Part shown: positions 23,908-43,677 of the stretch, piece by piece
How positions within the stretch are numbered: position 1 is the stretch's first letter
Layout of the letters: each line of letters opens with the position of its first letter
Virus record (IMG/VR): IMGVR_UViG_3300048121_001678
Location: 1-64,000 of that record
Length of the DNA: 64,000 nt
Reading direction: 5' to 3' (one strand)
Notes under the pieces: model-generated
Database searches by the model: none
What the model was told of the DNA's origin: nothing
What the model saw: the letters and a program-made list of their open reading frames with translations, nothing else
Made by a program: the position numbers and the translations under genes

Positions 23908-23932
23908 GTCTAATATTTTACTATAAATACTT

Positions 23933-25831: not shown

Positions 25832-25884
25832 TATCTTATTTTCTTTAGTCTCTTTATACTTATATTTTAAATAAAAATTAAAAC

Positions 25885-26463: not shown

Positions 26464-26465
26464 CC

Positions 26466-27197: not shown

Positions 27198-27632
27198 TTC
27201 AGGGTTGGTATATATTGATAGGTTTGTTAATGTTTCAATACAGTAGCATTCAGAATATGAAGTCTTATGTTCATCATATTTTTTAAACCCTAACATAAGT
27301 GGTCTAAACATATGATTACGACTATCCCAAAGTAAATCATAATCATACCCTAAGTCGGTTAATATATCATATACTTCATAATGATATGATTCGACAATTT
27401 TAATATCAGGTATTTCTTGATTAAATTCAATCAACTCATTTCTTAATTCGATTAAATTTTTTTTTGTTGTATCTATTTTTTTTACAAATGTTGGATATAT
27501 TGATAGCATATCATAAAATTGTGTTGTTCCTTCAATCTTTTTACCCTGATTCATGTTATAAACCATTAAGATAAAAGGAGTTTCGGAATCTATTAAACTC
27601 TGAAACTCCTCTTTACTATATCTTATTAACAT
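27165..27632 (-). CDS. Hypothetical protein
   Basis: 155-aa ORF within the hydroxylase cluster. Confidence 0.65.
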   Translation of the reverse strand: MLIRYSKEEFQSLIDSETPFILMVYNMNQGKKIEGTTQFYDMLSIYPTFVKKIDTTKKNLIELRNELIEFNQEIPDIKIVESYHYEVYDILTDLGYDYDLLWDSRNHMFRPLMLGFKKYDEHKTSYSECYCIETLTNLSIYTNPELFEPPSVSES

Positions 27633-27633
27633 A

Positions 27634-28251: not shown

Positions 28252-28306
28252 ATCTTTAATTTTTAAAAATATAAACTAACATTGTAATTAAATAAATAAG
28301 AAACAT

Positions 28307-29776: not shown

Positions 29777-30583
29777 TAAATTGTCACCATCGTATTTCAT
29801 GGTTTCATAATTAGAATGCAAGTCTTTAATAAAATTTTCTATGTGTTTATTACATATTAATTTATTATCTAACTTAATAATTATGAATATTTGAAATATC
29901 ATTGATATTACTTGGGTTTCATCAATAATTGAATTATCATCTAACTTATTATCGTTAATAGTTAAAGACTTAAACTGATATTTTGGATAGTTTCTCTTAA
30001 GTTCCCTAACTAACTTTTTACTCCCACCACTTAAAAATACTTTTTCACCATCTTTAATTTTTTTAATAATTAAGTTTTTAGATTGTTCATATGTTAAGTC
30101 ATCCACATTCATTATTAAATGACTTTCCATTATAAGTCTTTCAAGAATATTAATGAAATTATCGTAATACTTATTTTCAATTTTAAATAAACTTAATAGA
30201 GTATTTTTAAAATCCTCACCCTTATTGAAATCTAAGTAATTTAATAAATCTCGATTATTATATAAATGTAGTACATCACAGTCATTATATACCGAATTAA
30301 AACTATCCGTTTCAAATGAATTTAAACCATCATTAGGAATGTCTAATAAATTTAATCTACCATAAGTGTATTCTTTACTATCCCAATCTCTTTCCCACCA
30401 ATTAATTTTAGACGTAAAATATTCGACTAAAGGAATACCTTCAGTATCGTTAATTCTAAAATTCCATCCATGAGTTTTTGCAAATATAAATGCAGCAACT
30501 GATGAGTGTAACTTCTCAATTAATGTTTGATTTGTAGAATTAAAAACTATAAATTTATTTGATAATGTTGGTACGTAATCCAT
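29759..30583 (-). CDS. Putative fucosyltransferase/NodZ-like glycosyltransferase (divergent)
   Basis: Weak resemblance only: SSVAAFIFAKTHGW..RI at the N-terminus and KVFLSGGS...ELK in the C-terminal half. Confidence 0.35.
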   Translation of the reverse strand: MDYVPTLSNKFIVFNSTNQTLIEKLHSSVAAFIFAKTHGWNFRINDTEGIPLVEYFTSKINWWERDWDSKEYTYGRLNLLDIPNDGLNSFETDSFNSVYNDCDVLHLYNNRDLLNYLDFNKGEDFKNTLLSLFKIENKYYDNFINILERLIMESHLIMNVDDLTYEQSKNLIIKKIKDGEKVFLSGGSKKLVRELKRNYPKYQFKSLTINDNKLDDNSIIDETQVISMIFQIFIIIKLDNKLICNKHIENFIKDLHSNYETMKYDGDNLLYKIN

Positions 30584-30628: not shown

Positions 30629-33600
30629 TTATAATAAACCTTTTTCTTTAGCAGTTTTTTCTAACTGTGTGATTTCAATTTCTTTACTTAACAAAATAGT
30701 ATTCTGTTGTTGTAATGCTTCTGTTACAACGGCAATTAAAATAGGGTAATTAACAAGCTTAGTACCATCAACTGACTCACTTATCGCTTGAGGAAAATAC
30801 TCCTCAACTTCCTGTGCAATAAAACCAACATTAGGAATGTTTGTAGTTTCTTGAGGAATACCATTAACTACTTCTCTCCATAAAAATGAAACACCTCTCA
30901 TATTGAGAATGCGGTCTAAAGCATCTGACATCACTCTATAGTTTTTCTTTAACCTTCTATCAGATGGTGGTCCTGGTGCACCAACATATCCTTTTGGTCC
31001 TTTATTACCTTGTGGTCCCGCATATCCTTTTGGTCCTTTAGCCCCTGGTTCTGCAGCTGGACCCTGTGGTCCGTAGTTCCCTTGTGGACCCTTAGGTCCG
31101 TCATTACCTGTTGCACCTCTATTACCTTTAAGACCCGTTGGTCCTTTTATTCCTTTATCTCCTGTTGGTCCTGTTGAACCTCCTGGACCTTGTGGTGATG
31201 CCCCTGTTGAACCTTGTGGTCCTCTGACTCCCTGTGTACCTCTAAAACCTTTTGGTCCACCAACACCTTTTGTACCTTTTGGTCCTGGATTCGCATATCC
31301 TTTTGGTCCTTTGTCGTTAGATGTCGGCCCTGTTGAACCTTGGTCACCAATGTCAATCGGTCCTTTATACCCTTTAACTCCTTTAACACCTACTGGTCCT
31401 GTTGAACCACCTGGTCCTGGATTGTTAGCACCTGTTGGCCCTGTTGAACCACCTGGACCTCTAACTCCCTGAGCACCTCTCGGTCCTTGTACCTTTGGTC
31501 CTTTATCACCACCTGGTCCTTGTGGTGACGCTCCTTGAGCACCTCTACCACCTTTCGGTGAATTACCTGTACCACCGACATTACCTCTGAAACCTTTTTC
31601 ACCAACATAACCTTTTGGCCCTTTAGTACCTTTATCTCCGACACCACCAGTATTACCTCTGTTACCTGTTGCACCTTTATAACCTTTTGGCCCTTTTGTA
31701 CCATCAGGTGCGGTTGGACCCTTGTTACCTTTTGGCCCTTTATCATTAGATGTTGGCCCTGTTGAACCTCCACCACCTATATCAATGTTACCTTTAAAAC
31801 CTTTAACCCCTTTTGTACCTACTGGTCCTGTTGAACCACCTGGTCCCGGATTATTAGCACCTGTTGGCCCTGTCGAACCTTGTCCTCCTCTAGCACCTTG
31901 TGACCCTCTTGGTCCTTGTACCTTTGGTCCTTTATCACCCGTAGAACCATTTTGATTAGAACCTTGATTACCTCTATTACCTTTCGGTGAGTTACCTTGT
32001 GGTCCTTTGGCACCTCTGAAACCTTTTGACCCTACAAGTCCTTTTGGTCCATCAGGTCCGGTTGCACCTCTATTACCTTGTGGGCCTGTAGTTCCACCTG
32101 TCCCTCGATTACCTTTTGGTCCATCAGGTGCAGTGTATCCTTTAGCACCTTTCTGTCCTTTATCACCACCTGGTCCTTGTGGTCCAGGATTTGCAGAACC
32201 CGTAGAACCTCCCGGTCCTTGTGTTGAATCACCTACAGGTCCTTGTAGACCTTGGCTACTTGCACCTTGAGGTCCTTGACCACCTTGACCACCAGTGTTA
32301 CCTTGTGCACCTTGTGGTGATGACCCTGTTGAACCTATTGGTCCTGTTGGTGATGACCCTGTTGAACCACCTGGTCCTTGTGGTGAATTACCCTGTGGTC
32401 CCTTGGGTCCTTGGTTCCCTTGGTAACCTTTTACACCTTTAGGTCCTTGTGAACCTTTGTAACCCTTTGGTCCTTTTGACCCTGCAGGTGCGATTGGCCC
32501 TTTTATACCTTTAGCACCTTGTCCACCCTTTTGTCCTTTTTGTCCCGTAGGTCCTGTTGAACCGCCGGGTCCTTGTGGACCTGGATTAGCGAATCCTTTT
32601 GGTCCTTTTGGCCCTGTATTAGATTGCCCTTTTTGTCCTTTAGGTCCTTGATTATTATCACCAGTAGCACCTGTTGAACCTCCACCTCCTGTATTACCTC
32701 TGTTACCTTGTGGTGAACTACCTGTAGCTCCTCTATTACCTTGTGGTGATGAACCTTGTGGTCCTTTAGCCCCCTGAGGTGAGTTACCTTGTGGTCCTTT
32801 AGTACCTTTATTACCTTTATTACCTTTATTACCTTTTGGTCCGTCAACACCCGTAGCACCTTTCGTACCTTTAGCTCCGTCAGCACCAGTAGTTCCTTTT
32901 TGACCTTTCTGACCTTTAGGTGCAGTTGGACCTTTTATACCTTTCTGACCTTTTTGTCCAGTAGGTCCTTGTGGCCCTTGATTACTATCTCCTGTTGAAC
33001 CTCCCGGTCCTTGTGTTGAATCACCTACAGGACCTTGACTACCTTGATTACTATCACCTGTCCCACCTTGGTTTCCTTGACTACCCTGTGAACCTTGTGG
33101 ACCCTGTGGTGATGCTCCTGTTGAACCTCCTGGACCTTGTGGTGATGCTCCTGTTGAACCTGTTGCCCCTTTTGGTGAGTTACCTTGGACTCCTTTGGAA
33201 CCAGTTCCACCTTTCTGTCCTTTATTACCCTTCGCACCTTGTGAACCTTTAAAACCTTTTAGACCTTTTGGTCCTGCAGGTGCTGTTGGCCCCTTGATTC
33301 CTTTTTGACCCGCAGGTGCTGTTGGTCCTTTATCGCCACCAGGTCCTTGTAAACCAACAGGTCCTTGTGCACCTTGATTTGAATCACCAATATCACCTTG
33401 TGGTCCTTGATTTGAATCACCTGTAGGACCTTTTGGTCCCACATTAACGTCACCCTGACCACCTTGTGGTCCTTGAGTTGACGACCCTACGTTACCTTGT
33501 GAGCCCTGAGTCCCTCTATTACCTTGTGGGCCCTGTGGTGATGCACCTGTTGAACCTTGTGGTCCTTGTGGTGAATTACCTTGAGAACCTTGTGGTCCTT

Positions 33601-34687
33601 GTGGTGAATTACCTTGTGGACCTTTTTGCCCTTTTGGTGAATTACCTTGGCTACCTTTAATACCTTTAATACCCTTAATACCTTTAAGACCTTTGTTTCC
33701 TAAACCACCTTTGAATCCTTTAGTACCCTTTGCACCTTGGTTACCCACAGGTCCCTTAATACCTTTTTGACCTTCGTTACCTTTTTGTCCTTTTTGTCCT
33801 GACTCACCTATTGGTCCTTTCTCACCATCTAAACCTATATTCTGTTCTCCTTTGACACCTTTTTGTCCTTGGAAATTATCACCATCAGAACCTTGTGAAC
33901 CTTGAGTAGAATCACCTACGGGTCCTTGTTGACCTGTTGGTCCTGTAGAACCTTCAGTACCTTGACCCCCTTGAGGTGAGTTACCTTGGAATCCTTTTAC
34001 ACCTTTTGGTGATTCACCAACTTGACCATCACCACCTTTTGGTGAATTACCTTGTGGTCCTTTTGCACCTTGTGGTGAATTACCCTGAGTACCTTTAGTA
34101 CCCTTAGTACCTTTTTGACCCTCAGGACCTTGGCTACCTTTTATCCCTTTTGTTCCTTTAAAACCTTTTTGACCTTTTTGACCTAACTCACCTTTTTGAC
34201 CATCAGAACCTTTAGTACCCTTAGTACCTTTTTCACCTACATCACCTTGTGTTCCTGTAATACCCTTAGCACCTTCGGTACCTTTAATACCTTTCTGTCC
34301 CTTTTCAGCATTGATAGATTGACCTTTTACACCTTGGTACCCTGTTGGTCCCTGAGGCCCTTTTTCTCCTTGTTCTGCAGTTGGAGCATTACTACCAACA
34401 TCACCAACACCACCTTTTTGTCCTTTCGCCGATGTGGCTGCCGGTCCTTGCCATACACCTAAATTATTAATCCTATCTTGATTATTAACTTTTACTTTAC
34501 CTGATGTAACATTAAATCGGGATGATGTTTCATATAATGGATTATTATTTAGAATAATTGCGTCTTCAACACCACCAAATATAAGTGTTTGATTAGTTTC
34601 ATCATATGATAGAGTAATCGTTGAATTACTACTACCTGAAAACTCAAATATACCACTCCCCGGTGTTATTTTTATATTTTTACCCAT
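30629..34687 (-). CDS. Collagen-like tail fibre 1 with C-terminal S74 intramolecular chaperone
   Basis: About 1150 aa of interrupted Gly-X-Y; PPSDRRLKKN...GFIAQEVEEYFP...VNY S74 motifs. Confidence 0.9.
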   Translation of the reverse strand: MGKNIKITPGSGIFEFSGSSNSTITLSYDETNQTLIFGGVEDAIILNNNPLYETSSRFNVTSGKVKVNNQDRINNLGVWQGPAATSAKGQKGGVGDVGSNAPTAEQGEKGPQGPTGYQGVKGQSINAEKGQKGIKGTEGAKGITGTQGDVGEKGTKGTKGSDGQKGELGQKGQKGFKGTKGIKGSQGPEGQKGTKGTKGTQGNSPQGAKGPQGNSPKGGDGQVGESPKGVKGFQGNSPQGGQGTEGSTGPTGQQGPVGDSTQGSQGSDGDNFQGQKGVKGEQNIGLDGEKGPIGESGQKGQKGNEGQKGIKGPVGNQGAKGTKGFKGGLGNKGLKGIKGIKGIKGSQGNSPKGQKGPQGNSPQGPQGSQGNSPQGPQGSTGASPQGPQGNRGTQGSQGNVGSSTQGPQGGQGDVNVGPKGPTGDSNQGPQGDIGDSNQGAQGPVGLQGPGGDKGPTAPAGQKGIKGPTAPAGPKGLKGFKGSQGAKGNKGQKGGTGSKGVQGNSPKGATGSTGASPQGPGGSTGASPQGPQGSQGSQGNQGGTGDSNQGSQGPVGDSTQGPGGSTGDSNQGPQGPTGQKGQKGIKGPTAPKGQKGQKGTTGADGAKGTKGATGVDGPKGNKGNKGNKGTKGPQGNSPQGAKGPQGSSPQGNRGATGSSPQGNRGNTGGGGSTGATGDNNQGPKGQKGQSNTGPKGPKGFANPGPQGPGGSTGPTGQKGQKGGQGAKGIKGPIAPAGSKGPKGYKGSQGPKGVKGYQGNQGPKGPQGNSPQGPGGSTGSSPTGPIGSTGSSPQGAQGNTGGQGGQGPQGASSQGLQGPVGDSTQGPGGSTGSANPGPQGPGGDKGQKGAKGYTAPDGPKGNRGTGGTTGPQGNRGATGPDGPKGLVGSKGFRGAKGPQGNSPKGNRGNQGSNQNGSTGDKGPKVQGPRGSQGARGGQGSTGPTGANNPGPGGSTGPVGTKGVKGFKGNIDIGGGGSTGPTSNDKGPKGNKGPTAPDGTKGPKGYKGATGNRGNTGGVGDKGTKGPKGYVGEKGFRGNVGGTGNSPKGGRGAQGASPQGPGGDKGPKVQGPRGAQGVRGPGGSTGPTGANNPGPGGSTGPVGVKGVKGYKGPIDIGDQGSTGPTSNDKGPKGYANPGPKGTKGVGGPKGFRGTQGVRGPQGSTGASPQGPGGSTGPTGDKGIKGPTGLKGNRGATGNDGPKGPQGNYGPQGPAAEPGAKGPKGYAGPQGNKGPKGYVGAPGPPSDRRLKKNYRVMSDALDRILNMRGVSFLWREVVNGIPQETTNIPNVGFIAQEVEEYFPQAISESVDGTKLVNYPILIAVVTEALQQQNTILLSKEIEITQLEKTAKEKGLL

Positions 34688-37600
34688 TATTCAACTATTG
34701 TTTTAAGTGTATTTAATCTATTTTGTAATTTCTCAATAATTACCATATGTTCTTGAACTGTACCAATACCTAAGTTGGTTATCAAATCATATTTTAAAAC
34801 ATGAACACCATCTTTATCTTTAAATATAACCTCGGGTAGTACTTCTTCAACTTCCTGAGCAATAAAACCTAATGACTCACCTTTTAATGTGGGTCTATGA
34901 GTTTTAGTAAAATTGTCATCATTCCATTCAAAATAAAGACCTTTTAACATTAAAAGTTTTTCTAAATTACCTTTTAACCCTTTTAAATTATCTTTATATC
35001 TAATATCCGATGCTGGACCTTGTGCTCCTGTTGGACCTTTATCACCTGTATTTCCTCTACCACCTTGTGGTCCCGTTGAACCTTGTGGCCCTACATCATC
35101 ATAACCTCTAGGTCCTTGTGGACCTTTTTGACCTTTCGGTCCTGGATTGGCATAACCTTTTGGTCCTTTAGTAGTGACCGCATCACCTTGAGCACCTTGA
35201 GCACCTCGTGCACCTTTACTTCCATCCACACCATCAGGACCATCATTGCCCGTGGCACCTCTGAAACCTTTAGCACCTTTATTACCCTTAGGTCCTTTGT
35301 CGTTAGATGCTGGACCTGTTGAACCTTGTGGACCCTGTGGTGATGCACCTGTTGAACCTTGTGGTCCTCTAACTCCTTGTGGTCCTCTATTACCTGTTTG
35401 TTTAGGCCCTTTATCTCCCGTAGGTCCTTGTGGTGACGCACCTGGCGCACCTCTATTACCTTTAGGTGAAACACCCTGTGGTCCTTTGGTTCCTCTGAAA
35501 CCTTTTTCACCAACATAACCTTTTGGCCCTTTAGCACCCTTATCTCCGACACCACCAGTGTTACCTCTATTACCTGTCGCACCTTTATAACCTTTTGGTC
35601 CTTTAGGTCCATCAGCTGCGTTATTACCAACATAACCTTTTGGACCTTTATCATTAGATGTTGGTCCTGTTGAACCACCATCACCAATGTCGATACCACC
35701 TTTATAACCTTTAACACCTTTAGCACCTACCGGTCCTGTTGAACCACCTGGTCCTGGATTGTTAGCACCTGTTGGTCCTGTTGAACCTCCACCCGCTCTA
35801 GCACCTTGTGGTCCTCTCGGTCCTTGAATAATTGGTCCTTTGTCCCCACCTGGTCCTTGTGGTGATGCACCTTGACTACCTCTATTACCTTTAGGTGAAG
35901 CACCCTGTGGTCCTTTGGCTCCCCTGAATCCTTTATTTCCAACAAAACCTTTTGGTCCCTTAGCACCTTTATCTCCAATACCACCAGTTCCACCTCTATT
36001 ACCTGTTGCACCTTTATTACCTTTTGGCCCTTTTGGACCATCAGGTGCGGTAAAACCTTTATAACCTTTCGGTCCTTTGTCGTTAGATGTCGGTCCTTTA
36101 GGTCCCGGATTTGCATAACCTTTAACACCTTTAGGTCCTGGATTTGCATAACCTTTTGGTCCTTTTGGTCCAGGATTGTTACTACCAACATCACCTGTTG
36201 AACCTCCATCACCTGTATTACCTCTTGGTCCTTGTGGTGAAGAACCAGTACCACCTCTATTACCTTTCGGCGATGTACCCGTTATACCTTTAGCACCTTG
36301 TGGTGAGTTACCTGTAGCTCCTTTAGTACCTTTAAGTCCTTTTTGCCCTTTTTGTCCTTTGGCTCCCGCTCCACCAGTAGCACCTCTATTACCTTTTGGT
36401 CCGTCAGCACCAGTGGCACCTCTATTACCTTTTGGTCCGTCAGGTGCAGTATATCCTTTGGTACCTTTATTACCTTTTGAACCCGTAGGTCCTTGTGGTC
36501 CTTGGTTACTATCACCTGTTGAACCACCTGGTCCTTGTGTTGAGTCACCTACGGGCCCTTGTGGTCCTTGATTACTATCTCCTGTTCCACCTTGGTTACC
36601 TTGGCTACCCTGTGAACCTTGTGGCCCTTGGGGAGATGCCCCTGTTGAACCTCCTGGACCTTGTGGTGATGCTCCTGTTGAGCCTGTCGCCCCTTTTGGT
36701 GAATTACCTTGAACCCCTTTGGCACCTTGTCCACCTTTATATCCTTTAACACCTTTAGGTCCTTGTGAACCTTTAAAACCTTTTAGACCTTTTGGTCCTG
36801 CAGGTGCTGTTGGTCCTTTAATACCTTTGGCACCTTGTCCACCCTTTTGTCCTTTTTGTCCCGTAGGACCTGTTGAACCACCGGGTCCTTGTGGTCCTGG
36901 ATTGGCTTGACCTTTTTGTCCTTTCGGTCCTGGATTGGCTTGACCTTTTTGTCCCTTATCACCAGGACTACTAATACCTGTAGGTCCTGTTGAACCTCCA
37001 CCTCCTGCACCACCTCTATTACCTTGTGGTGATGAACCCTGAGAACCTTGTGGTCCTTGCGGTGAGTTACCTTGTGGACCTTTAGCACCTTGTGGTGATG
37101 AGCCCTGTCCACCTTTTATTCCTTTTATACCTTTTATACCTTTGTTACCTTTTGGACCATCAGAACCTGTAGTACCTTTTGTACCTTTAGCACCATCAGC
37201 ACCTGTAGTACCTTTTTGACCTTTTTGACCATCAGGAGCAGTCGGACCTTTAACACCCTTTTGACCTTTTTGTCCCGTAGGACCTTGCTCTCCCTGATTA
37301 CTATCACCTGTTGAACCTTGTGGTCCTTGTGTTGAACTACCTGTTGAACCTTGTGGTCCTTGAGTTGAGGACCCAACCCCACCTTGATTACCTTGTGAAC
37401 CTTGATTACCTTGTGAACCCTGAGGTGAATTACCTTGTGGACCTTGTGCACCTTGTGGTGAAGAACCTGTAATTCCCTGTGGTCCTTGTGGTGAAACACC
37501 TTGAGGACCTTTCTGTCCTTTTGGTGAATTACCCTGAACACCTTTCTGTCCTTTAAAACCTTTTTCACCAATGTTACCTTTCGGCCCATTAGAACCCTTA

Positions 37601-38634
37601 AATCCTTTACTACCTTGGGAACCTTTTACACCTTTCTGTCCTTTATTACCTTGTGGTCCATCATTACCTTTCTGACCTTTTTGTCCTGACTCACCTATGG
37701 GTGCAATTGGTCCTTTGTCTCCACCTGGACCTGTAGAACCAGTTGGTCCTTGACCACCTTGATTCGTTTCACCCTTAGGACCTTTTTGTCCTGGTGTAGG
37801 GTCACCCTGTGGCCCTTGTGGTCCTTGATTACTATCACCTGTAGAACCACCTACTCCCTGTGGACCAGCACCACCTGTTCCTCCTCTTGGGGATGAACCT
37901 GTCGAACCTTGTGGACCCTGTGGTGAGTTACCCTGAGGACCTTTTAACCCTTTTGGTGAATTACCTTGGCTACCTTTAAAACCGTCAGAACCCTGACCGC
38001 CTTTTACACCTTTAAAACCTTTTGGTCCGTCAGGTGCAATATTTCCTTTATCACCTTTATTACCTGATGCACCTGTAATACCTTTTTGACCTTTTTGACC
38101 TTTCGGCGCCGTAGGACCTTTGATACCTTTGATACCCTTATTACCCTTTTGACCCTTTTCACCTACTTCACCAACTAATCCATTATCACCTTGTGAACCA
38201 TTATCACCTTGGAAGGTGTCACCTGTTGAACCTGTTTCTCCTGGATTATTTTGACCTGTCTGACCTTTTTGTCCTTTGAATAAAAGACCTTTATTACCCT
38301 TACTACCCGTACTACCTTTATCTCCTTTAACACCTTTCTCACCAGTATCACCTTTAGCACCAGGTGTTACACCATCACCTTTAGCACCTTTTAAACCCTT
38401 TTCACCAACAACACCGTCTATTCCTATATTACCCTTACTACCCTTATTTGGTTGGTTACCTTTCTCACCAATAGGACCTTTTAACCCCTTAATATTAGTT
38501 GTAGTAGCTGTCCAAATACCATCCTCATTTACTACGTCGATACCACCAACACGTAGACCTTTGTTCATCTTTGTTGGAACGTAAATTTTCATCCTTGTAG
38601 ATGCATCTGCTATGTGAAAAAGATTTTGTTTCAT
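34687..38634 (-). CDS. Collagen-like tail fibre 2 with S74 chaperone; lacks the shared N-terminal anchor
   Basis: Interrupted Gly-X-Y; PASDIRYKDN...GFIAQEVEEVLPE; TAATG coupling to fibre 1. Confidence 0.9.
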   Translation of the reverse strand: MKQNLFHIADASTRMKIYVPTKMNKGLRVGGIDVVNEDGIWTATTTNIKGLKGPIGEKGNQPNKGSKGNIGIDGVVGEKGLKGAKGDGVTPGAKGDTGEKGVKGDKGSTGSKGNKGLLFKGQKGQTGQNNPGETGSTGDTFQGDNGSQGDNGLVGEVGEKGQKGNKGIKGIKGPTAPKGQKGQKGITGASGNKGDKGNIAPDGPKGFKGVKGGQGSDGFKGSQGNSPKGLKGPQGNSPQGPQGSTGSSPRGGTGGAGPQGVGGSTGDSNQGPQGPQGDPTPGQKGPKGETNQGGQGPTGSTGPGGDKGPIAPIGESGQKGQKGNDGPQGNKGQKGVKGSQGSKGFKGSNGPKGNIGEKGFKGQKGVQGNSPKGQKGPQGVSPQGPQGITGSSPQGAQGPQGNSPQGSQGNQGSQGNQGGVGSSTQGPQGSTGSSTQGPQGSTGDSNQGEQGPTGQKGQKGVKGPTAPDGQKGQKGTTGADGAKGTKGTTGSDGPKGNKGIKGIKGIKGGQGSSPQGAKGPQGNSPQGPQGSQGSSPQGNRGGAGGGGSTGPTGISSPGDKGQKGQANPGPKGQKGQANPGPQGPGGSTGPTGQKGQKGGQGAKGIKGPTAPAGPKGLKGFKGSQGPKGVKGYKGGQGAKGVQGNSPKGATGSTGASPQGPGGSTGASPQGPQGSQGSQGNQGGTGDSNQGPQGPVGDSTQGPGGSTGDSNQGPQGPTGSKGNKGTKGYTAPDGPKGNRGATGADGPKGNRGATGGAGAKGQKGQKGLKGTKGATGNSPQGAKGITGTSPKGNRGGTGSSPQGPRGNTGDGGSTGDVGSNNPGPKGPKGYANPGPKGVKGYANPGPKGPTSNDKGPKGYKGFTAPDGPKGPKGNKGATGNRGGTGGIGDKGAKGPKGFVGNKGFRGAKGPQGASPKGNRGSQGASPQGPGGDKGPIIQGPRGPQGARAGGGSTGPTGANNPGPGGSTGPVGAKGVKGYKGGIDIGDGGSTGPTSNDKGPKGYVGNNAADGPKGPKGYKGATGNRGNTGGVGDKGAKGPKGYVGEKGFRGTKGPQGVSPKGNRGAPGASPQGPTGDKGPKQTGNRGPQGVRGPQGSTGASPQGPQGSTGPASNDKGPKGNKGAKGFRGATGNDGPDGVDGSKGARGAQGAQGDAVTTKGPKGYANPGPKGQKGPQGPRGYDDVGPQGSTGPQGGRGNTGDKGPTGAQGPASDIRYKDNLKGLKGNLEKLLMLKGLYFEWNDDNFTKTHRPTLKGESLGFIAQEVEEVLPEVIFKDKDGVHVLKYDLITNLGIGTVQEHMVIIEKLQNRLNTLKTIVE

Positions 38635-38677
38635 CGTTATATATAAATAGTTTAAGTAATTTAAATTTAAATTTTAA

Positions 38678-38818
38678 TTATGTCTCTTGTGAAAATAATA
38701 ACTCACCTGTTGTAGTCATCTCAATCATATAAGTCACCCCCGTACTTCCCGAGAATAAAACATGTGGGTTTGTATTTGCTGTAGTACCCGATGGGTAAAC
38801 AATTATAGTTTTAGCCAT
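38678..38818 (-). CDS. 46-aa stand-alone fibre-anchor-like peptide (not in ORF track)
   Basis: MAKTIIVYPSGTTANTNPHVLFSGSTGVTYMIEMTTTGELLFSQET resembles the N-termini of fibres 1 and 3; TAATG-coupled to fibre 3. Confidence 0.7.
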   Translation of the reverse strand: MAKTIIVYPSGTTANTNPHVLFSGSTGVTYMIEMTTTGELLFSQET

Positions 38819-41800
38819 TATATTTTATTTTTTAAATAAGTAATATCTTTATCAATATCATCAATCAATATCTGTTGTTCTTTAACCGCTTCAACTAAGT
38901 AAGCATTTAATAAAGAATAGTGTATACCTAAATAACCTTCTTTATTTCTAAAGACCACCTCAGGTATAATCTTATCAATCTCTTGTGCAATAATACCTAT
39001 TGAGTGTAATTTATCACGTTCTTTAAGGTACTCGTACATTGGTAAAGTCATGTTCCAATCATACTCCTTTAGTTCAATTTTTAATAACTTATCTAAAGAA
39101 CCAACAAGAGTATTAATTTCTTTTTTCAACCTTATATCTGATGGTGGAGGTGTCGGTCCATTAAAACAGTCTGGTTCTTGTGCAGCCACAAAACAAATAC
39201 TTAAATCAACAAGGTAAATTTCAATAGTACCAGGGTTGTTAATAAATACTATACCACCACGACAACCAGTGTTGTCACAGTTTTCACATCCTGAATCAGT
39301 CAAAAATGTACAATTCATGTTCCAACTCGAACAGTCGGGAGAATAGAAAGTTTGTAAGTTAGGTTCATCACAAATTGCGTCAGGGATATCACAATTGAAA
39401 TAGGTTTGAATTGCATTACAACCACCACCTGGTCCTGGAGGGCCAATGTCACCATTAGACCCTCTATATCCTTTAGGTCCTACACCACCTTGGTTACCTC
39501 TATTTCCTTTGTAAGTAATACCAATATTACCTTTTTGTCCCTTTTCCCCTATTGGTCCTTTTGGTGATGAACCTGTTGAACCTTGTGGTCCTTGATTTCC
39601 TCTAAAACCTTTATATCCTTGAGGACCTTTTATCCCTTTATTACCTTTTGGTCCTGGATTCGCATTACCTTTTGGTCCTTTGTCGTTAGATGTCGGGCCA
39701 GTTGAACCTATACCTCCTCTAGCTCCTTGTCCTCCCGGAGGACCATCAGGTCCATCAGCACCCGTGTCACCTCTGAAACCTTTATCACCAATATAACCTT
39801 TTGGCCCTTTAGCTCCCTTATCTCCGACACCGCCAGTGTTACCTCTGTTACCTGTTGCACCTTTATAACCTTTTGGTCCTTTATCTCCATCAGGTGCGGT
39901 TGGACCCTTGTTACCTTTTGGCCCTTTGTCGTTAGATGTTGGTCCTGTTGAACCACCATCACCAGTATCTATACCGCCTTTATATCCTTTAACACCTTTA
40001 ACACCTACCGGTCCTGTTGAACCACCTGGTCCTGGGTTAGGTGCACTTACGGGACCTAAAGAACCTTGTGGTCCTCTAACCCCTTGTGACCCTCTTGGTC
40101 CTTGTACCTTTGGTCCTTTATCTCCTGTAGGTCCTTGTGGTGACGCGCCTGGTGCACCTCTATTACCTTTAGGTGAAGCACCCTGTGGTCCTTTGGCACC
40201 TCTGAAACCTTTTTCACCAACAAAACCTTTTGGTCCTTTCGAACCTTGGTCACCAACACCACCTTGTGGTCCTCTGTTACCTGTAGCACCTTTATAACCT
40301 TTTGGTCCTTTAGGTCCATCAGGTGCGGTAAAACCTTTATAACCTTTCGGTCCTTTGTCGTTAGATGTCGGACCAGTTGAACCACCATCACCAATGTCGA
40401 CACCACCTTTATAACCTTTAACACCCTTAGTTCCCGTTGGCCCTGTTGAACCACCTGGTCCTGGATTGTTAGCACCTGTTGGCCCTGTTGAACCCGTACC
40501 AGCCCTATCACCCTGTGGACCAACTGGTGAATCACCTGTTGAACCTTGCGGACCAGTTGGTGACGTACCCGTAGAACCTCCCGGTCCTTGAGGTGAGTTA
40601 CCTTGTGGTCCTTTATTACCCGCAGTCCCTTTAAAACCTTTTAACCCTTTTGGTCCGTCAGCACCTTGGAATCCTTTTGGTCCTTTTGGTCCTGTAGGTG
40701 CAATATATCCTTTATTACCTTTTGGACCTGTAGGTGCAGTGTATCCTTTATCACCTGTTGGTCCTGTTTCCCCTGGGTCACCTTGTGGTCCAGGATTGGC
40801 ATATCCTTTTGGTCCTTTTGGTCCTGGATTACCGAAACCTTTTGGTCCTTTTGGTCCAGGATTATTACCACCTGTTGGTCCTGTTGAACCTCCACCACCT
40901 GTATTACCTCTTGGTCCTTGTGGTGAAGAACCAGTTGCTCCTCTATTACCTTTTGGTGATGAGCCTTGTGTTCCTTTGTTACCTTGTGGCGAGTTACCCT
41001 GTGGTCCTTTAGTACCTTTAGTACCTTTATTACCTTTATTACCTTTTGGTCCGTCAGCACCCGTAGCACCTCTATTACCTTTTGGCCCATCAGGTCCTGT
41101 AGTACCTTTTTGTCCTTTTTGTCCATCAGGTGCGATTGGACCCTTAATACCTTTTGGTCCTTTATCTCCTCCAGGTCCTTGTGGTCCTTGGTTACTATCA
41201 CCTGTTGAACCCCCTGGTCCTTGTGTTGACGCACCTGTTGGCCCTTGTGGACCTTGATTACTATCACCTGTCCCACCTTGGTTTCCTTGACTACCCTGTG
41301 AACCTTGTGGTCCTTGTGGTGACGCACCTGTTGAACCACCTGGTCCTTGCGGTGACGCTCCTGTTGAACCATTTCCACCTTTTTGAGAATTACCTTGAAC
41401 CCCTTTGGAGCCAGTTCCACCTTTAAATCCTTTAACCCCTTTAGCACCTTGGGAACCTTTGTTACCTTTATTACCTTTTGAACCAGCAGGTGCTGTTGGC
41501 CCTTTTAAACCTTTATCACCTAACCCACCCTTTTGTCCTTTTTGTCCCGTAGGACCTGTTGAACCACCGGGTCCTTGTGGGCCAGGATTGGCTTGACCTT
41601 TTTGACCTTTAGGTCCTGGATTGGCTTGACCTTTTTGACCTTTCGGTCCAGGATTATTTGAACCTGTTGGTCCTGTTGAACCACCAACACCCGTATTCCC
41701 TTGTGAACCTTGTGGTGAAGAACCTGTTGTACCTCTATTACCTTGAGGCGAGTTACCTTGTGGTCCTTTGGCACCTTGTGGTGAGTTACCTTGTGGTCCT

Positions 41801-43677
41801 TTATTACCTTTTGTACCCTTTTCACCAATAATACCTTTAGGTCCCGTATTACCTTTTTGACCTTTATTACCTTTTGACCCTACTGAACCTTTTACACCTT
41901 TATTACCTTTTGGTCCATCGTTACCTTTCTGACCTTTCTGACCTGGCTCACCAAAAGGTGCCGTCGGTCCTTTATCACCACCTGGACCAATTAAACCAAC
42001 GGGTCCTTGTGGACCTTGATTGGTATCACCTTTAATACCTTTTTGTCCAACATTAGAATCACCTAATTGTCCTTTTGGACCTGGATTTGCATCACCTTGA
42101 CCACCTTGTACTCCCTGTGTTGAATCGCCAACACCACCTTGAGTTCCTTGACCACCTTGTACTCCCTGAGGACCTTGTGGTGATGCCCCTGTTGAACCCT
42201 GAGGACCTTGTGGTGAATTACCTATAACCCCTTTATTACCTTGAGGGGAGTTACCCTGAGTCCCTTTAATTCCTTTTATACCTTTGGCACCTTTAAACCC
42301 TTTGGGTCCAACTGCACCTTTTACACCTTTTACACCAATTAAACCCTTGACACCTTTTTGTCCTTTTTCTCCAGCCTCACCATCAGGTGCAATAGGACCT
42401 TTAATACCTTTAGTACCTTTTTGTCCTTTCTCCCCCGTAGGTCCTTTAGGTCCAGGATTGTTATCACCAACAGGTCCTCGACCACCTTGAGTCTGCTCAC
42501 CTTTTTGGCCTTTGTCACCAGGTATATCTTCACTAGTAGGACCTGTAGAACCTTGGAAATTATCCCCAACAATCCCAACGTTACCCTGAGAACCTTTTAC
42601 ACCTTTACTACCTGTAATACCTTTTGGTGAACTACCTTGACTACCTTGACTACCTTTAGGGTTATTACCTTTCTGACCCTTTTCACCCAATTCGGTTTCA
42701 CCTTTCTGTCCTTTAAGACCTTTCTCACCTGTATCTCCGATATTTCCTGACTGAAACTGTTCAAAACTACCATTAACCATCACATCTGTAGATGTAATGG
42801 AATTAGTTAACGTAACACCATCTAAGAAGTTACCACCATTACTACTAGTTGTTGAACTAAATGTTAATACTAAACTACTATCTGTAGGTGTGAATGTGTG
42901 TGTATTTACTGTCCATTGGCTATTTGATGCAGTATAGTTACCTAAGTTAATATTTGTTGAACCACCAATAATAGTGACATTCATTATATTATCAAAAGAT
43001 GACCTACCTCTATGTGCAAAAGAAAGCACATACTCTTGACCCGAAACTACTGTAACTGTTTGTTGTAAGGCGTGTTTTTGTGATACTCTTGAATTGATTT
43101 CGGCAAAATAACTACCTGAATATGAAGGGACGTTTGAAAATCCACTAGCCCAAATTTCCACTACATTATCTGATGCAGTTGGGTCCCAACCTGGAATACA
43201 GTCTTCATAGAACCATGTAAACGTTGTTGGTGGTGGTGGACACGAACCTCCGAAACCATCTTCACCTTTATCACCTTTTTGACCTTTTACATTTTCACCT
43301 ACAGGACCTAAAATACCTTTTACACCCTTAGCACCTTTATAACCTTTATCACCTTTTACCTGATTGGTACCTTTTTCACCTTTAGGTCCTAAATCCCCTT
43401 TAATATTAGTGTCATTACCTATCCAATCACCAGCACTGTCTATTGTACTTGCTAATTTAAAATCAATGTCATCGACAAAATCAATATCACCCTTAACATT
43501 AAAGTTAAGTGTATCCGCGTCTATTTTTACTATCTCGTCACCCTGTGTTTTTCCTGAAAATACTAAAGAACCATCACTTTCTACGTTCATACGTATTTCA
43601 TCACCACTACTATTTGTGAAAAGAATATACGGGTTACCCCCTGAAGGGTTAGGTACAATTTTTATGTTCTTAGCCAT
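38818..43677 (-). CDS. Collagen-like tail fibre 3 with DUF642/CBM-like insert, Cys-rich tip and S74 chaperone
   Basis: Gly-X-Y stalk; beta-sandwich insert (IPGW...VEIW...FAEIN...LQQTV...LSFAHRGR...FLDGV); Cys-rich segment; PPSDIRLKKE S74 motif. Confidence 0.9.
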   Translation of the reverse strand: MAKNIKIVPNPSGGNPYILFTNSSGDEIRMNVESDGSLVFSGKTQGDEIVKIDADTLNFNVKGDIDFVDDIDFKLASTIDSAGDWIGNDTNIKGDLGPKGEKGTNQVKGDKGYKGAKGVKGILGPVGENVKGQKGDKGEDGFGGSCPPPPTTFTWFYEDCIPGWDPTASDNVVEIWASGFSNVPSYSGSYFAEINSRVSQKHALQQTVTVVSGQEYVLSFAHRGRSSFDNIMNVTIIGGSTNINLGNYTASNSQWTVNTHTFTPTDSSLVLTFSSTTSSNGGNFLDGVTLTNSITSTDVMVNGSFEQFQSGNIGDTGEKGLKGQKGETELGEKGQKGNNPKGSQGSQGSSPKGITGSKGVKGSQGNVGIVGDNFQGSTGPTSEDIPGDKGQKGEQTQGGRGPVGDNNPGPKGPTGEKGQKGTKGIKGPIAPDGEAGEKGQKGVKGLIGVKGVKGAVGPKGFKGAKGIKGIKGTQGNSPQGNKGVIGNSPQGPQGSTGASPQGPQGVQGGQGTQGGVGDSTQGVQGGQGDANPGPKGQLGDSNVGQKGIKGDTNQGPQGPVGLIGPGGDKGPTAPFGEPGQKGQKGNDGPKGNKGVKGSVGSKGNKGQKGNTGPKGIIGEKGTKGNKGPQGNSPQGAKGPQGNSPQGNRGTTGSSPQGSQGNTGVGGSTGPTGSNNPGPKGQKGQANPGPKGQKGQANPGPQGPGGSTGPTGQKGQKGGLGDKGLKGPTAPAGSKGNKGNKGSQGAKGVKGFKGGTGSKGVQGNSQKGGNGSTGASPQGPGGSTGASPQGPQGSQGSQGNQGGTGDSNQGPQGPTGASTQGPGGSTGDSNQGPQGPGGDKGPKGIKGPIAPDGQKGQKGTTGPDGPKGNRGATGADGPKGNKGNKGTKGTKGPQGNSPQGNKGTQGSSPKGNRGATGSSPQGPRGNTGGGGSTGPTGGNNPGPKGPKGFGNPGPKGPKGYANPGPQGDPGETGPTGDKGYTAPTGPKGNKGYIAPTGPKGPKGFQGADGPKGLKGFKGTAGNKGPQGNSPQGPGGSTGTSPTGPQGSTGDSPVGPQGDRAGTGSTGPTGANNPGPGGSTGPTGTKGVKGYKGGVDIGDGGSTGPTSNDKGPKGYKGFTAPDGPKGPKGYKGATGNRGPQGGVGDQGSKGPKGFVGEKGFRGAKGPQGASPKGNRGAPGASPQGPTGDKGPKVQGPRGSQGVRGPQGSLGPVSAPNPGPGGSTGPVGVKGVKGYKGGIDTGDGGSTGPTSNDKGPKGNKGPTAPDGDKGPKGYKGATGNRGNTGGVGDKGAKGPKGYIGDKGFRGDTGADGPDGPPGGQGARGGIGSTGPTSNDKGPKGNANPGPKGNKGIKGPQGYKGFRGNQGPQGSTGSSPKGPIGEKGQKGNIGITYKGNRGNQGGVGPKGYRGSNGDIGPPGPGGGCNAIQTYFNCDIPDAICDEPNLQTFYSPDCSSWNMNCTFLTDSGCENCDNTGCRGGIVFINNPGTIEIYLVDLSICFVAAQEPDCFNGPTPPPSDIRLKKEINTLVGSLDKLLKIELKEYDWNMTLPMYEYLKERDKLHSIGIIAQEIDKIIPEVVFRNKEGYLGIHYSLLNAYLVEAVKEQQILIDDIDKDITYLKNKI

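What the first reader, a model, noticed from the sequence alone, without database searches (positions are those of the whole stretch)
30629..39142. S74 chaperones attached directly to bare collagen: headless fibres
Seen: in fibres 1 and 2 the last Gly-X-Y triplets run straight into PPSD/PASD (about 30960 and 35008), with no globular receptor-binding domain. Only fibre 3 has a short Cys-rich tip. Established: S74 normally follows a beta-helix or adhesin domain and is cleaved at the SD motif. Inference: the S74 acts as a C-propeptide analogue that nucleates the triple helix, and the mature fibres end in naked collagen. Any binding would then come from the stalk or its modifications. Three paralogues could also form heterotrimers.
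Basis: partly seen in the sequence, partly recalled or inferred. Interest (0 to 1): 0.65.

Follow-up and report, generated by a model that had tools for sequence, protein, structure and literature searches.

The report
Phage collagen fibres ending directly in S74
A marine jumbo phage encodes three roughly 330-nm collagen-like fibres, and in two of them the collagen runs without any spacer into a self-cleaving S74 trimerisation domain, an arrangement conserved across the phage's relatives and most simply read as a removable folding nucleus for collagen.

Summary
F1 (30629-34687), F2 (34687-38634) and F3 (38818-43677), all on the minus strand, are collagen plus Peptidase_S74 proteins. In F1 and F2 the last Gly-X-Y triplet ends on the residue before the catalytic Ser. 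F3 has a 92-residue tip with 9 Cys.

This is not a one-off. Related fragments of about 290-kb phages carry the same tandem genes in three orthologous types. Type a has the Cys tip; types b and c are always joined directly. Collagen length is matched within each genome (480 to 1160 residues between genomes). Ser and Lys are present in every copy examined. A homotrimer model scores ipSAE 0.75 against a best control of 0.00, with collagen-like staggered contacts running into the S74 trimer.

Direct junctions are rare elsewhere: 8 of 144 nearest S74 representatives, 0 of 82 in bacterial genomes, 0 of 13 cultured-phage hits.

The C-propeptide-like reading is plausible, but cleavage and nucleation are inferred. 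"Headless" holds only for the C-terminal ends of F1 and F2. All three fibres share an N-terminal beta domain, and F3 carries a CBM4/9-type module. Heterotrimers are disfavoured by register mismatch but not excluded. I rate this a new variant of a known kind.

The parts
30629..34687 (-). F1 (type c): 1352-aa collagen fibre gene
   Evidence: ORF, translation, Pfam Collagen + Peptidase_S74; orthologues L004, L005, L008-L011 and L058
30632..30964 (-). F1 S74 intramolecular chaperone, residues 1242-1352; Ser1242, Lys1247; conserved C-terminal tail ending K-E-K-G-L-L
   Evidence: Pfam 50.6 bits; genome search 30785-30964; PDB 6f45 E 2e-5 and 7dc3 E 4e-3; trimer contacts
30965..34423 (-). F1 collagen region, residues 89-1241 (1153 aa; 339 triplets in 56 runs); the last triplet G-P-P abuts Ser1242
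   Evidence: script
34424..34687 (-). F1 N-terminal beta-rich domain (residues 1-88) shared by all three fibre types
   Evidence: alignment A5; AF2 model is all-beta, pLDDT 62.8; found only in these three genes in the genome
34687..38634 (-). F2 (type b): 1315-aa collagen fibre gene; its stop overlaps the F1 start (TAATG)
34690..35010 (-). F2 S74 domain, residues 1209-1315; Ser1209 directly follows the triplet G-P-A
35011..38487 (-). F2 collagen region, residues 50-1208 (1159 aa; 336 triplets in 59 runs)
38818..43677 (-). F3 (type a): 1619-aa collagen fibre gene with tip and internal CBM
38821..39141 (-). F3 S74 domain, residues 1513-1619
   Evidence: Pfam 42.5 bits; Foldseek match to the MyRF ICA domain 7dc3, E 7.5e-6
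39142..39417 (-). F3 Cys-rich tip, residues 1421-1512 (92 aa, 9 Cys); fold unknown
   Evidence: orthologous tips of 77-111 aa with 6-10 Cys; AF2 pLDDT below 50; no Pfam hit
42748..43239 (-). F3 carbohydrate-binding module inserted in the collagen (residues 147-310)
   Evidence: Pfam CBM_4_9 29.6 bits (cut-off 25.9) and DUF642 28.6 bits (cut-off 27); script
29759..30583 (-). 274-aa ORF immediately downstream of F1; unknown function; not a gp38-like adhesin
   Evidence: translation; no Pfam or PHROG hit
23933..29776 (.). Candidate collagen-modification island: sulfotransferase-like (23933-24700), DUF6445 (25885-26463), two 2OG-Fe(II) oxygenases (26466-27197 and 27634-28251), GT17 glycosyltransferase (28307-29776)
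   Evidence: Pfam; PDB nearest are PKHD-type hydroxylases; the same island sits next to the F1 orthologue in L004
52731..54611 (-). 626-aa glycosyltransferase: N-terminal LH3/PLOD3-type GT domain plus a C-terminal COLGALT1-like region
   Evidence: Pfam GT_PLOD 215 bits; PDB 6fxk E 2e-50, mimivirus R699 E 5e-41, COLGALT1 E 3e-6

Best explanation
F1, F2 and F3 are three co-transcribed collagen-like fibre proteins of a roughly 297-kb marine tailed phage. Its terminase is distantly like those of T4-type phages. Each chain has a small N-terminal beta domain, presumed to attach it to the virion. It then has about 1150 residues of interrupted Gly-X-Y, which would be roughly 330 nm as a triple helix at 0.286 nm per residue. 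It ends in a C-terminal S74 intramolecular chaperone. Each protein most likely forms a homotrimer. The S74 domains trimerise first and bring the three chains into register at their C-terminal ends. The collagen helix then zips from C to N. The trimer-dependent Ser/Lys dyad then cuts after the Ser and releases the chaperone. Mature F1 and F2 would therefore end in bare collagen (...G-P-P-S and ...G-P-A-S). F3 would end in a small Cys-rich tip and also carries a carbohydrate-binding module near its N-terminus. Shown here: the architecture, its conservation, the catalytic residues and a predicted trimer. Inferred: the folding order, the cleavage, virion attachment, and modification of the many Y-position lysines by the neighbouring oxygenases and LH3/COLGALT-like transferase.
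For: Zero-residue junction in F1 and F2. S74 HMM scores are above cut-off in all three. Ser and Lys are invariant in alignments A1, A3 and A4 and present in every lineage copy examined. The domain resembles solved self-cleaving chaperones: S16 gp37 (6f45, E 2e-5) and the MyRF ICA domain (7dc3, Foldseek E 7.5e-6). A homotrimer model of F1 1167-1352 gives ipSAE 0.75 in three runs against a best control of 0.00. That mark was reached by 21 of 30 solved pairs and 0 of 23 single chains. The runs share at least 86% of contacts and the partner pLDDT is at least 75. Contacts run continuously over 1167-1236 with a one-residue stagger and then through 1241-1352. The direct junction is kept in every type b and type c orthologue in L004-L011 and L058, and the three S74 clades are supported at 97/95, 85/83 and 92/94. 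The genome is a tailed phage: sheath and terminase. The three genes are the only collagen, S74 and N-domain carriers in it. F2 and F1 overlap as TAATG and no terminator-like site lies between the genes on the coding strand. Established knowledge: ICA/S74 domains catalyse trimerisation-dependent autoproteolysis with a conserved Ser and Lys (PMC11058221; Schwarzer 2007 and Schulz 2010 from my own knowledge). Collagen folding needs a trimerisation nucleus, such as the PfC domain of EPclA (PMC3368898), the procollagen C-propeptide, or the foldon in designed chimeras (own knowledge).
Against: There is no experimental evidence of cleavage, of triple-helix formation or of presence in virions. The genes lie at least 45 kb from the block of large, presumably structural ORFs (89-184 kb) and about 120 kb from the sheath gene, among modification and auxiliary genes. 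The complex model was made without alignments, resembles solved S74 trimers and may score from memory. Each chain has 56-59 interruptions and almost no Y-position Pro (about 1%), so helix stability is uncertain. The N-terminal domain could be the real trimerisation nucleus, or a second one. The matched lengths of the three paralogues are not explained by three independent homotrimers.
Confidence: 0.6

Rival explanations
1. The S74 domain is not released. It stays as the distal trimeric knob of F1 and F2, clamping the collagen end and possibly serving as the contact surface.
For: The type c S74 domains carry a strongly conserved extra C-terminal tail (A-K-E-K-G-L-I/L) that has no obvious role in a discarded propeptide. 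A bare end of a Pro-poor collagen might fray. The trimer model shows a compact knob.
Against: The Ser and the Lys five residues later are kept in every copy examined. That would be unnecessary for a permanent knob. In all characterised phage S74 proteins the domain is cleaved off (own knowledge; PMC11058221).
Confidence: 0.15
2. The three paralogues co-assemble 1:1:1 into one heterotrimeric collagen, as in C1q or type IV collagen. Its single Cys-rich head comes from the type a chain, and b and c are headless because they are partner chains.
For: The trio is conserved as three orthologous types. Collagen spans are matched within each genome but differ between genomes: 1163/1159/1153, 919/942/909, 483/502/480 and 765/762/724. 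Adjacent genes overlap by one base (TAATG in the window; shared coordinates in L008, L009 and L058). A small Cys-rich tip fits a monomeric head.
Against: From the C-end the chains share a Gly register for only 27 residues, and 39-50% overall against 33% by chance. In relatives one chain has 20-41 runs while the other two are nearly uninterrupted. The S74 domains are only 25-30% identical to each other, and all solved S74 or ICA assemblies are homotrimers (own knowledge). The homotrimer model of F1 is confident. The tip would have to loop out between collagen and S74 in one chain only.
Confidence: 0.12
3. A separate adhesin caps the cleaved collagen tip, as gp38 caps gp37 in T2 and S16 phages after the chaperone is removed. 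F1 and F2 would then be stalks for a protein encoded elsewhere.
For: The best solved sequence match of the F1 S74 domain is S16 gp37, whose tip binds gp38. An unannotated 274-aa gene lies directly downstream of F1, the position of gp38.
Against: The downstream protein has no Gly-rich motifs and no PHROG or Pfam match. It is not found next to the type c gene in the more distant relatives; it gave no tblastn match in any related locus. The next conserved neighbour, a 550-aa protein, is acidic. It has no Pfam or annotated PHROG match, and its nearest Atlas clusters are uncharacterised viral proteins. A bare collagen end offers little surface to dock on.
Confidence: 0.05
4. The proteins are not infection fibres. 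They would be a coat or matrix, such as capsid hair or material acting on the host surface, made with the adjacent modification enzymes.
For: The genes lie outside the large-ORF block and among oxygenases, glycosyltransferases, a sulfotransferase-like gene, thioredoxin and auxiliary metabolic genes. Mimivirus uses modified collagen in its fibril layer (own knowledge; PMC9546862).
Against: S74 domains are characteristic of fibre and spike proteins, and all best PHROG matches are tail-fibre families. The related cyanophage S-CAM9 protein with collagen and S74 is annotated as a tail fibre and is also followed by two 2OG oxygenases. This reading is compatible with the S74 mechanism above and differs only in where the fibres sit.
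Confidence: 0.2

Closest known systems
Collagen-containing tail fibres with C-terminal S74 in T4-like cyanophages (e.g. Synechococcus phage S-CAM9, 1830 aa, annotated tail fiber protein)
   Same: Collagen segment plus C-terminal S74 with the S-D-R-R-L-K motif (37% identity to the F1 S74). Two 2OG-Fe(II) oxygenase genes follow.
   Different: S-CAM9 has only about 190 residues of collagen and a globular segment of about 170 residues between the collagen and S74. In F1 and F2 that segment is absent and the collagen is six times longer.
Phage intramolecular chaperones: endosialidase K1F/endoNF CIMCD (3gw6), T5 pb1 (4uw8), S16 gp37 (6f45); eukaryotic MyRF ICA domain (7dc3)
   Same: Same Pfam family, the Ser/Lys dyad, C-terminal position, a predicted trimer with a C-terminal helical bundle.
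   Different: In those proteins the segment before the Ser is a triple beta-helix, a beta-prism or a DNA-binding domain. Here it is a collagen triple helix, which has a one-residue chain stagger and must be joined to a threefold-symmetric domain with no linker.
Procollagen C-propeptide (COLFI) and engineered (Gly-Pro-Pro)10-foldon chimeras
   Same: A C-terminal trimerisation module that sets chain register and nucleates C-to-N folding of collagen. The C-propeptide is also removed afterwards.
   Different: There is no sequence relationship (no COLFI or fibritin match). Removal would be autocatalytic rather than by a separate proteinase. The foldon is not removed at all.
Collagen plus Peptidase_S74 fibre proteins of polinton-like viruses (PMC12220804)
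   Same: Collagen repeats fused to a C-terminal chaperone-of-endosialidase domain in viral fibre genes.
   Different: These are eukaryotic viruses with one or two short collagen domains. Whether their junction is direct is not stated, and I did not examine those sequences.
Prophage collagen-like proteins EPclA-D of E. coli O157:H7 (PMC3368898)
   Same: Phage fibre proteins with an N-terminal domain, a collagen stalk and a C-terminal trimerisation domain that stabilises the helix.
   Different: The C-terminal PfC domain is retained as a globular head and is not S74. The collagen is short, in a molecule of about 50-60 nm.
Mimivirus collagens with L230 and R699 modification enzymes
   Same: Viral collagen with many Y-position Lys, encoded together with 2OG oxygenases and an LH3-type glycosyltransferase. 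The window protein 52731-54611 matches R699 at E 5e-41.
   Different: That is a giant virus of amoebae. As far as I know no S74 has been reported on its collagens. No LH-domain homologue was identified in the window: the oxygenases here are closest to PKHD-type hydroxylases.

Membership tests
Peptidase S74 / CIMCD / ICA domain (PF13884) | Profile match above the curated cut-off, at the C-terminus of the protein | tested here: met
   50.6, 40.6 and 42.5 bits against a cut-off of 22, at residues 1242-1301, 1209-1269 and 1513-1575;
Peptidase S74 / CIMCD / ICA domain (PF13884) | Catalytic Ser, and Lys five residues later | tested here: met
   S-D-x-R-x-K in F1, F2 and F3. Ser and Lys are invariant in A1, A3 and A4. 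L009 type a has S-D-V-N-L-K.
Peptidase S74 / CIMCD / ICA domain (PF13884) | Fold like solved intramolecular chaperones | tested here: met
   The F3 model (S74 part at pLDDT 55-72) matches MyRF ICA 7dc3 at E 7.5e-6, prob 1.00, with weaker matches to 3gud, 3gw6 and 4uw8. By sequence, F1 matches 6f45 at E 2e-5.
Peptidase S74 / CIMCD / ICA domain (PF13884) | Homotrimer | tested here: inconclusive
   Prediction only: ipSAE 0.75 against a best control of 0.00; 21 of 30 solved pairs and 0 of 23 single chains reached the mark. It may reflect memory of solved S74 trimers.
Peptidase S74 / CIMCD / ICA domain (PF13884) | Autoproteolytic release after the Ser | not testable with these tools
   Needs expression and mass spectrometry
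Peptidase S74 / CIMCD / ICA domain (PF13884) | Usual context: preceded by a beta-helix, beta-rich stalk or head domain | tested here: not met
   F1 and F2 have 0 residues between collagen and Ser. The usual context was seen in 136 of 144 representatives, 71 of 80 viral loci and 82 of 82 bacterial copies.
Collagen triple helix (PF01391) | Long Gly-X-Y repeats | tested here: met
   1005-1017 residues per chain in runs of at least 3 triplets; longest run 19-25 triplets; Pfam 182-203 bits
Collagen triple helix (PF01391) | Uninterrupted repeat, as in fibrillar collagen | tested here: not met
   55-58 interruptions per chain, mostly 2-residue insertions. Some orthologues are uninterrupted over 480-765 residues.
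Collagen triple helix (PF01391) | Forms a staggered three-chain helix | tested here: inconclusive
   The model shows contacts offset by one residue over 1167-1236.
Procollagen C-propeptide (COLFI, PF01410) | Sequence membership | tested here: not met
   No COLFI hit in F1-F3. The likeness is functional only.
T2/S16-type gp37-gp38 distal fibre with a separate adhesin | gp38-like Gly-rich adhesin gene downstream of the S74-bearing fibre gene | tested here: not met
   The downstream 274-aa protein has no such motifs and no family hit.
LH3/R699-type collagen glycosylation system | GT_PLOD-type glycosyltransferase encoded with a Lys-rich collagen | tested here: met
   Pfam GT_PLOD 215 bits; 6fxk E 2e-50, R699 E 5e-41, COLGALT1 E 3e-6; Y-position Lys 33-37%
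LH3/R699-type collagen glycosylation system | Lysyl hydroxylase of the LH/PLOD type | tested here: inconclusive
   Two 2OG oxygenases are present, but they are closest to PKHD-type and P4H-like hydroxylases. Their substrate is unknown.

The most novel reading that the evidence does not exclude
The conserved trio is one machine. The a, b and c chains would form a C1q-like heterotrimeric collagen whose register is set by a heterotrimeric S74 chaperone. After self-cleavage the fibre would carry a single monomeric Cys-rich head from chain a on an otherwise bare, glycosylated stalk of about 330 nm. That would explain the headless partners, the matched lengths and the translational coupling in one stroke. 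It would be the first heterotrimeric S74 and the first heterotrimeric viral collagen.
Probability: 0.12. Interest if true: 0.85.

Novelty: new variant of a known kind. Interest (0 to 1): 0.55.

Why it matters
Collagen cannot fold without a domain that brings three chains into register. Animals use a C-propeptide that a separate protease must remove, and engineers use the T4 foldon, which stays attached. If this reading holds, this phage lineage has a natural module of about 110 residues that does both jobs: it trimerises, then removes itself and leaves a single extra Ser. That can be tested directly in E. coli and could give a traceless tag for recombinant collagen. For phage biology it points to a widespread marine group of roughly 290-kb phages, seen in seawater, marine and estuary metagenomes from 13 studies. 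These phages would build three equal-length collagen fibres longer than the type I collagen helix. They sit next to enzymes related to human LH3 and COLGALT1, a collagen modification toolkit so far documented for giant viruses and, to my knowledge, not for bacteriophages. It also raises a clean question: why two of three conserved fibres need no distal domain.

Tried and rejected
1. NCLDV origin. There is no Capsid_NCLDV match (though that control did not ring). Sheath and terminase show a tailed phage.
2. Near-identical cultured phage. None was found by megablast.
3. Fold of the F3 Cys-rich tip. AF2 on a 6-sequence alignment gave pLDDT below 50 over the tip, and there is no Pfam hit, so the fold is unknown.
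4. Fold of the N-terminal domain. The AF2 model has pLDDT 62.8. Foldseek against PDB and BFVD gave nothing at E <= 0.001; frataxin-like rows at E > 0.3 are taken as chance.
5. gp38-like adhesin downstream. Rejected.
6. The conserved 550-aa neighbour as an adhesin. It is acidic and has no Pfam or annotated PHROG match. Its nearest Atlas clusters are uncharacterised viral proteins, with a PcfJ cluster only at 0.82. Rejected.
7. A link between Y-position Lys content and presence of GT_PLOD in relatives. No clean correlation. The L058 contig has GT_PLOD but only 1-11% Y-Lys, and the relatives are fragments of 12-26% completeness.
8. PHROG annotation of the large ORFs at 89-184 kb, to find conventional fibres. 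Nearly all are unannotated, so I cannot say whether the collagen fibres are the main receptor-binding proteins.
9. Literature on a direct collagen-S74 junction or on phage lysyl-hydroxylase systems. Nothing was found.
10. Atlas feature search on the F3 insert. It gave collagen clusters and a DUF642 cluster at 0.79, a lead only. The Pfam scan of the insert alone settled it.
11. Hetero-combinations in complex prediction could not be run because the cap is one job, so the heterotrimer test rests on the register analysis only.
12. Housekeeping. The RNA-library contigs do not show transcription. Only genetic code 11 was used.

Full report
WHAT IS THERE. Three long ORFs lie head to tail on the minus strand: F3 at 38818-43677 (1619 aa), F2 at 34687-38634 (1315 aa) and F1 at 30629-34687 (1352 aa). 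Each matches Pfam Collagen (182-203 bits) and, at its C-terminus, Peptidase_S74 (50.6, 40.6 and 42.5 bits; cut-off 22). A script that segments the chains into Gly-X-Y runs shows that in F1 the last triplet (G-P-P) ends at residue 1241 and the S74 Ser is residue 1242. In F2 the last triplet (G-P-A) ends at 1208 and the Ser is 1209. There are therefore no residues between collagen and chaperone. F3 has 92 non-collagen residues with 9 Cys between its last triplet and Ser1513. One refinement applies. Each chain holds 335-339 triplets in 56-59 runs, broken mostly by 2-residue insertions, so this is interrupted rather than continuous collagen. Each collagen span is 1153-1163 residues (for F3, after subtracting an inserted domain). 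That is about 330 nm at the standard rise of 0.286 nm per residue, which I take from my own knowledge.

WHOSE GENES. The window is the first 64 kb of a 297,164-bp IMG/VR virus record rated 99% complete. The record has a tail sheath gene. Its large terminase is 26-29% identical to those of T4-like Flavobacterium phages and cyanophages. No NCLDV capsid was found. It is therefore a tailed jumbo phage. The three genes are the only carriers of collagen, S74 and the shared N-terminal domain in the genome. Near-identical DNA occurs in seawater, marine and estuary metagenomes from 13 studies besides the likely source sample. Independent contigs reproduce the F1 junction without indels (X2: 0 differences over 1509 nt; X6: 39 substitutions over 2950 nt). 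Short contigs from two metatranscriptome libraries also cover the S74 and junction region (30803-30984 and 30657-30997). The tool warns that DNA may be present in such libraries, so I do not count this as proof of transcription. F2's stop and F1's start overlap as TAATG. No terminator-like site lies between the three genes on their strand, and a strong one lies upstream of F3. Together these suggest one transcription unit.

THE ARRANGEMENT IS A CONSERVED FAMILY FEATURE. A scan of IMG/VR with an S74 alignment returned 80 loci. The closest ones (L004-L011 and L058) have Gly-X-Y abutting the Ser-Asp. They share syntenic neighbours with the window (tblastn). They come from fragments rated 12-26% complete at 35-77 kb, which implies genomes of similar jumbo size. 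Where enough sequence is present (L006, L008, L009, L011, L058) there are again tandem collagen-S74 genes. A maximum-likelihood tree of 21 S74 domains gives three clades. Type b contains F2 (support 97/95), type a contains F3 (85/83) and type c contains F1 (92/94). Every type a protein has a tip of 77-111 residues with 6-10 Cys. Every type b and type c protein has the direct junction, either G-P-P|S-D or G-P|S-D with the Ser in the Y position. The split into one tipped and two tipless fibres therefore predates the divergence of these phages and is maintained by selection.

A second regularity emerged from the same data. The collagen span is nearly equal among the three paralogues of one genome but differs widely between genomes:
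- window: 1163/1159/1153
- L008: 919/942/909
- L011: 918/942/908
- L009: 483/502/480
- L058: 765/762/724
In the relatives, two chains are often almost uninterrupted while the third has 20-41 runs. Simple homogenisation by gene conversion therefore does not explain the equal lengths.

HOW UNUSUAL IS THE DIRECT JUNCTION.
- I ran the F1 S74 domain against 1.84 billion representative proteins (26,735 hits at E <= 0.001). Among the 150 best hits, 144 have a recognisable Ser-Asp motif, and 8 of those have collagen abutting it.
- All 8 share the F1-type C-terminal region. Seven end in K-E/Q-K-G-L-I and so belong to the same lineage. One (P0050, 292 aa) is a complete miniature version: a 45-residue N-domain, about 140 residues of collagen, then S74.
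- The other 136 have beta-rich, non-collagen sequence before the Ser.
- In one genome per prokaryotic species, 0 of 82 S74 domains in the 80 best loci have a direct junction, and only 2 have any collagen upstream.
- Among cultured phages, 13 records match at E <= 1e-8. Eleven alignments start at the Ser. Those of S-CAM9 and S-PRM1 extend a few residues further upstream. In S-CAM9, which I read, these are non-collagen: about 190 residues of collagen, then about 170 globular residues, then S74.
- Other IMG/VR proteins that combine collagen and S74 also have a spacer.
Collagen plus S74 as a domain pair is known, for example in polinton-like viruses (PMC12220804). I found no paper that discusses a spacer-free junction.

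MECHANISM. The S74/ICA domain is known to trimerise and then to cut itself off by a trimerisation-dependent Ser/Lys mechanism (PMC11058221; Schwarzer 2007 and Schulz 2010 from my own knowledge). Here the Ser, and the Lys five residues on, are invariant. The F1 domain matches the self-cleaving chaperone of S16 gp37 (6f45, E 2e-5) and the MyRF ICA domain (7dc3) by sequence. A model of the F3 domain matches 7dc3 by fold (E 7.5e-6).

A three-copy model of F1 residues 1167-1352 gave ipSAE 0.75 in each of three runs, against 0.00 for the best of three controls. That mark was reached by 21 of 30 solved pairs and 0 of 23 single chains. The runs agree in at least 86% of contacts, and the partner pLDDT is at least 75. 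Confident contacts run continuously through 1167-1236 with a one-residue offset between chains, as in a collagen helix. They continue through 1241-1352, ending in a helical bundle. This supports a homotrimer in which the triple helix leads straight into the chaperone, but it does not prove it. The score may partly reflect memory of solved S74 trimers.

Collagen needs an adjacent trimerisation domain to fold (PfC in EPclA, PMC3368898; C-propeptide and foldon from my own knowledge). Putting this together, the most economical reading is that S74 sets the register, the helix zips from C to N, and the chaperone then leaves. F1 and F2 would then end in ...G-P-P-S and ...G-P-A-S. The last triplet before the Ser is G-P-x in nearly all orthologues. 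Cleavage, folding order and virion location are inferred, not shown.

HOW HEADLESS ARE THEY. Only the C-terminal ends of F1 and F2 are bare.
- All three types share a homologous N-terminal domain of about 50-100 residues that ends in an invariant Trp-x-Gly just before the collagen. It is predicted all-beta with modest confidence and has no recognisable fold relative. By analogy with other fibres it would be the attachment end, but this was not tested.
- F3 additionally carries a 164-residue insert at residues 147-310. Scanned alone, it passes the Pfam cut-offs for CBM_4_9 (29.6 bits against 25.9) and DUF642 (28.6 against 27). This is a carbohydrate-binding module placed about 50 collagen residues from the N-domain.
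- The L006 orthologue has an unrelated 359-residue insert at the same place.
- No gp38-like adhesin gene follows F1.

- Y positions are 33-37% Lys and only about 1% Pro.
- The genes are flanked by two 2OG-Fe(II) oxygenases, a DUF6445 protein, a GT17 transferase and a sulfotransferase-like gene.
- At 52731-54611 lies a 626-residue protein. Its N-terminal half matches the glycosyltransferase domain of human LH3/PLOD3 (E 2e-50) and mimivirus R699 (E 5e-41). Its C-terminal part matches procollagen galactosyltransferase COLGALT1 (E 3e-6).
- The close relative L004 keeps the same island next to its F1 orthologue.
- 2OG oxygenases occur in 4 of 5 related fragments and GT_PLOD in 1 of 5.
- The oxygenases are closest to PKHD-type hydroxylases, so their substrate is open.

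HETEROTRIMERS. When the three collagens are anchored at their C-terminal ends, they share a Gly register for only 27 residues. Overall they share it at 39-50% of positions, against 33% by chance. The S74 domains are 25-30% identical between types. A heterotrimer would thus have to tolerate dozens of unmatched interruptions, which argues for three homotrimers. The conserved trio, the matched lengths and the one-base gene overlaps are nevertheless what a 1:1:1 complex would predict. I keep this as the novel case at about 0.12.

KNOWN OR NEW. The parts are known: phage collagen, S74 chaperones, and their co-occurrence. The following are new, as far as the tools and the library show:
- a spacer-free collagen-to-S74 junction;
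- its strict conservation in two of three orthologous fibre types in a lineage of marine jumbo phages;
- the matched collagen lengths;
- the association in a bacteriophage with LH3/COLGALT-like enzymes.
I file F1-F3 as members of the S74 and collagen families, with an atypical context for S74. They work like, but are not members of, the C-propeptide class. Verdict: new variant of a known kind, interest 0.55.

LIMITS. All relatives are uncultured. The host is unknown; the low G+C content and a TonB-dependent receptor gene are hints at best. Only genetic code 11 was used.

Noticed in passing
window 52731-54611 (-): A 626-aa protein combines an LH3/PLOD3-type glycosyltransferase domain (6fxk E 2e-50; mimivirus R699 E 5e-41) with a COLGALT1-like C-terminal region (E 3e-6). 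Both sugar-adding steps of collagen hydroxylysine glycosylation may therefore be encoded in one phage gene.
   Followed up: partly
window F1-F3; L006, L008, L009, L011, L058: The collagen span is matched within about 5% among the three paralogues of each genome, yet ranges from about 480 to about 1160 residues between genomes. In some genomes two chains are uninterrupted and one is highly interrupted. No explanation so far accounts for this.
   Followed up: partly
window 42748-43239 (-); L006:1806-2882: F3 has a CBM_4_9/DUF642 module inserted in the collagen about 50 residues after the N-domain. The L006 orthologue has an unrelated 359-aa insert with no Pfam hit at the equivalent place. This looks like a swappable cassette site.
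   Followed up: partly
window 30632-30652 (-) and type c orthologues: Type c S74 domains end in a conserved tail, A-K-E-K-G-L-I/L, which is absent from types a and b. Its role is unknown.
   Followed up: no
window 30965-43398 (collagen regions): The interruptions are stereotyped 5-residue Gly-to-Gly steps such as G-N-S-P-Q-G, G-A-S-P-Q-G, G-D-S-N-Q-G and G-x-A-N-P-G (about 41-44 per chain), plus Gly-to-Ala steps such as G-P-T-A-P-A/D-G. They may be kink or modification sites.
   Followed up: no
window vs L008, L009, L058: Y-position Lys is 33-43% in the window and L006 collagens but 0-11% in the more distant relatives, which are rich in Gln and Thr instead. The stalk chemistry has changed while the architecture stayed the same.
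   Followed up: partly
window 48150-50708, 45482-46612, 5587-7188, 58691-59629, 13155-13664, 44830-45147, 11494-12435: There is an unusual set of cellular-type genes for a phage: TonB-dependent receptor with plug, glutamine synthetase-like, sulfatase, DnaJ, glutathione peroxidase, thioredoxin and thymidylate synthase.
   Followed up: no
window 22303-23955 and 51006-52667 (-); L006, L007: A 550-aa acidic protein is conserved downstream of the collagen genes in all relatives and is duplicated in L006 and L007. It has no Pfam match, and its nearest Atlas clusters are uncharacterised viral proteins. A separate 553-aa ORF at 51006-52667 carries a PcfJ-like domain.
   Followed up: partly
window 30134-30997: Contigs from two metatranscriptome libraries (marine X16, estuary X18) cover parts of the downstream ORF, the F1 S74 domain and the junction. 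DNA carry-over cannot be excluded.
   Followed up: partly
L084 (Synechococcus phage S-CAM9) 6703-7868: In this cultured T4-like cyanophage the collagen and S74 tail fibre gene is also followed by two 2OG-Fe(II) oxygenase genes. The pairing of collagen fibres with oxygenases may therefore be widespread in marine myophages.
   Followed up: no
G000:C1 89222-184717: A block of very large minus-strand ORFs (up to 2499 aa) has several members sharing the unknown PHROG family 15511 and almost no functional annotation. It is presumably the structural module of a very divergent phage.
   Followed up: partly
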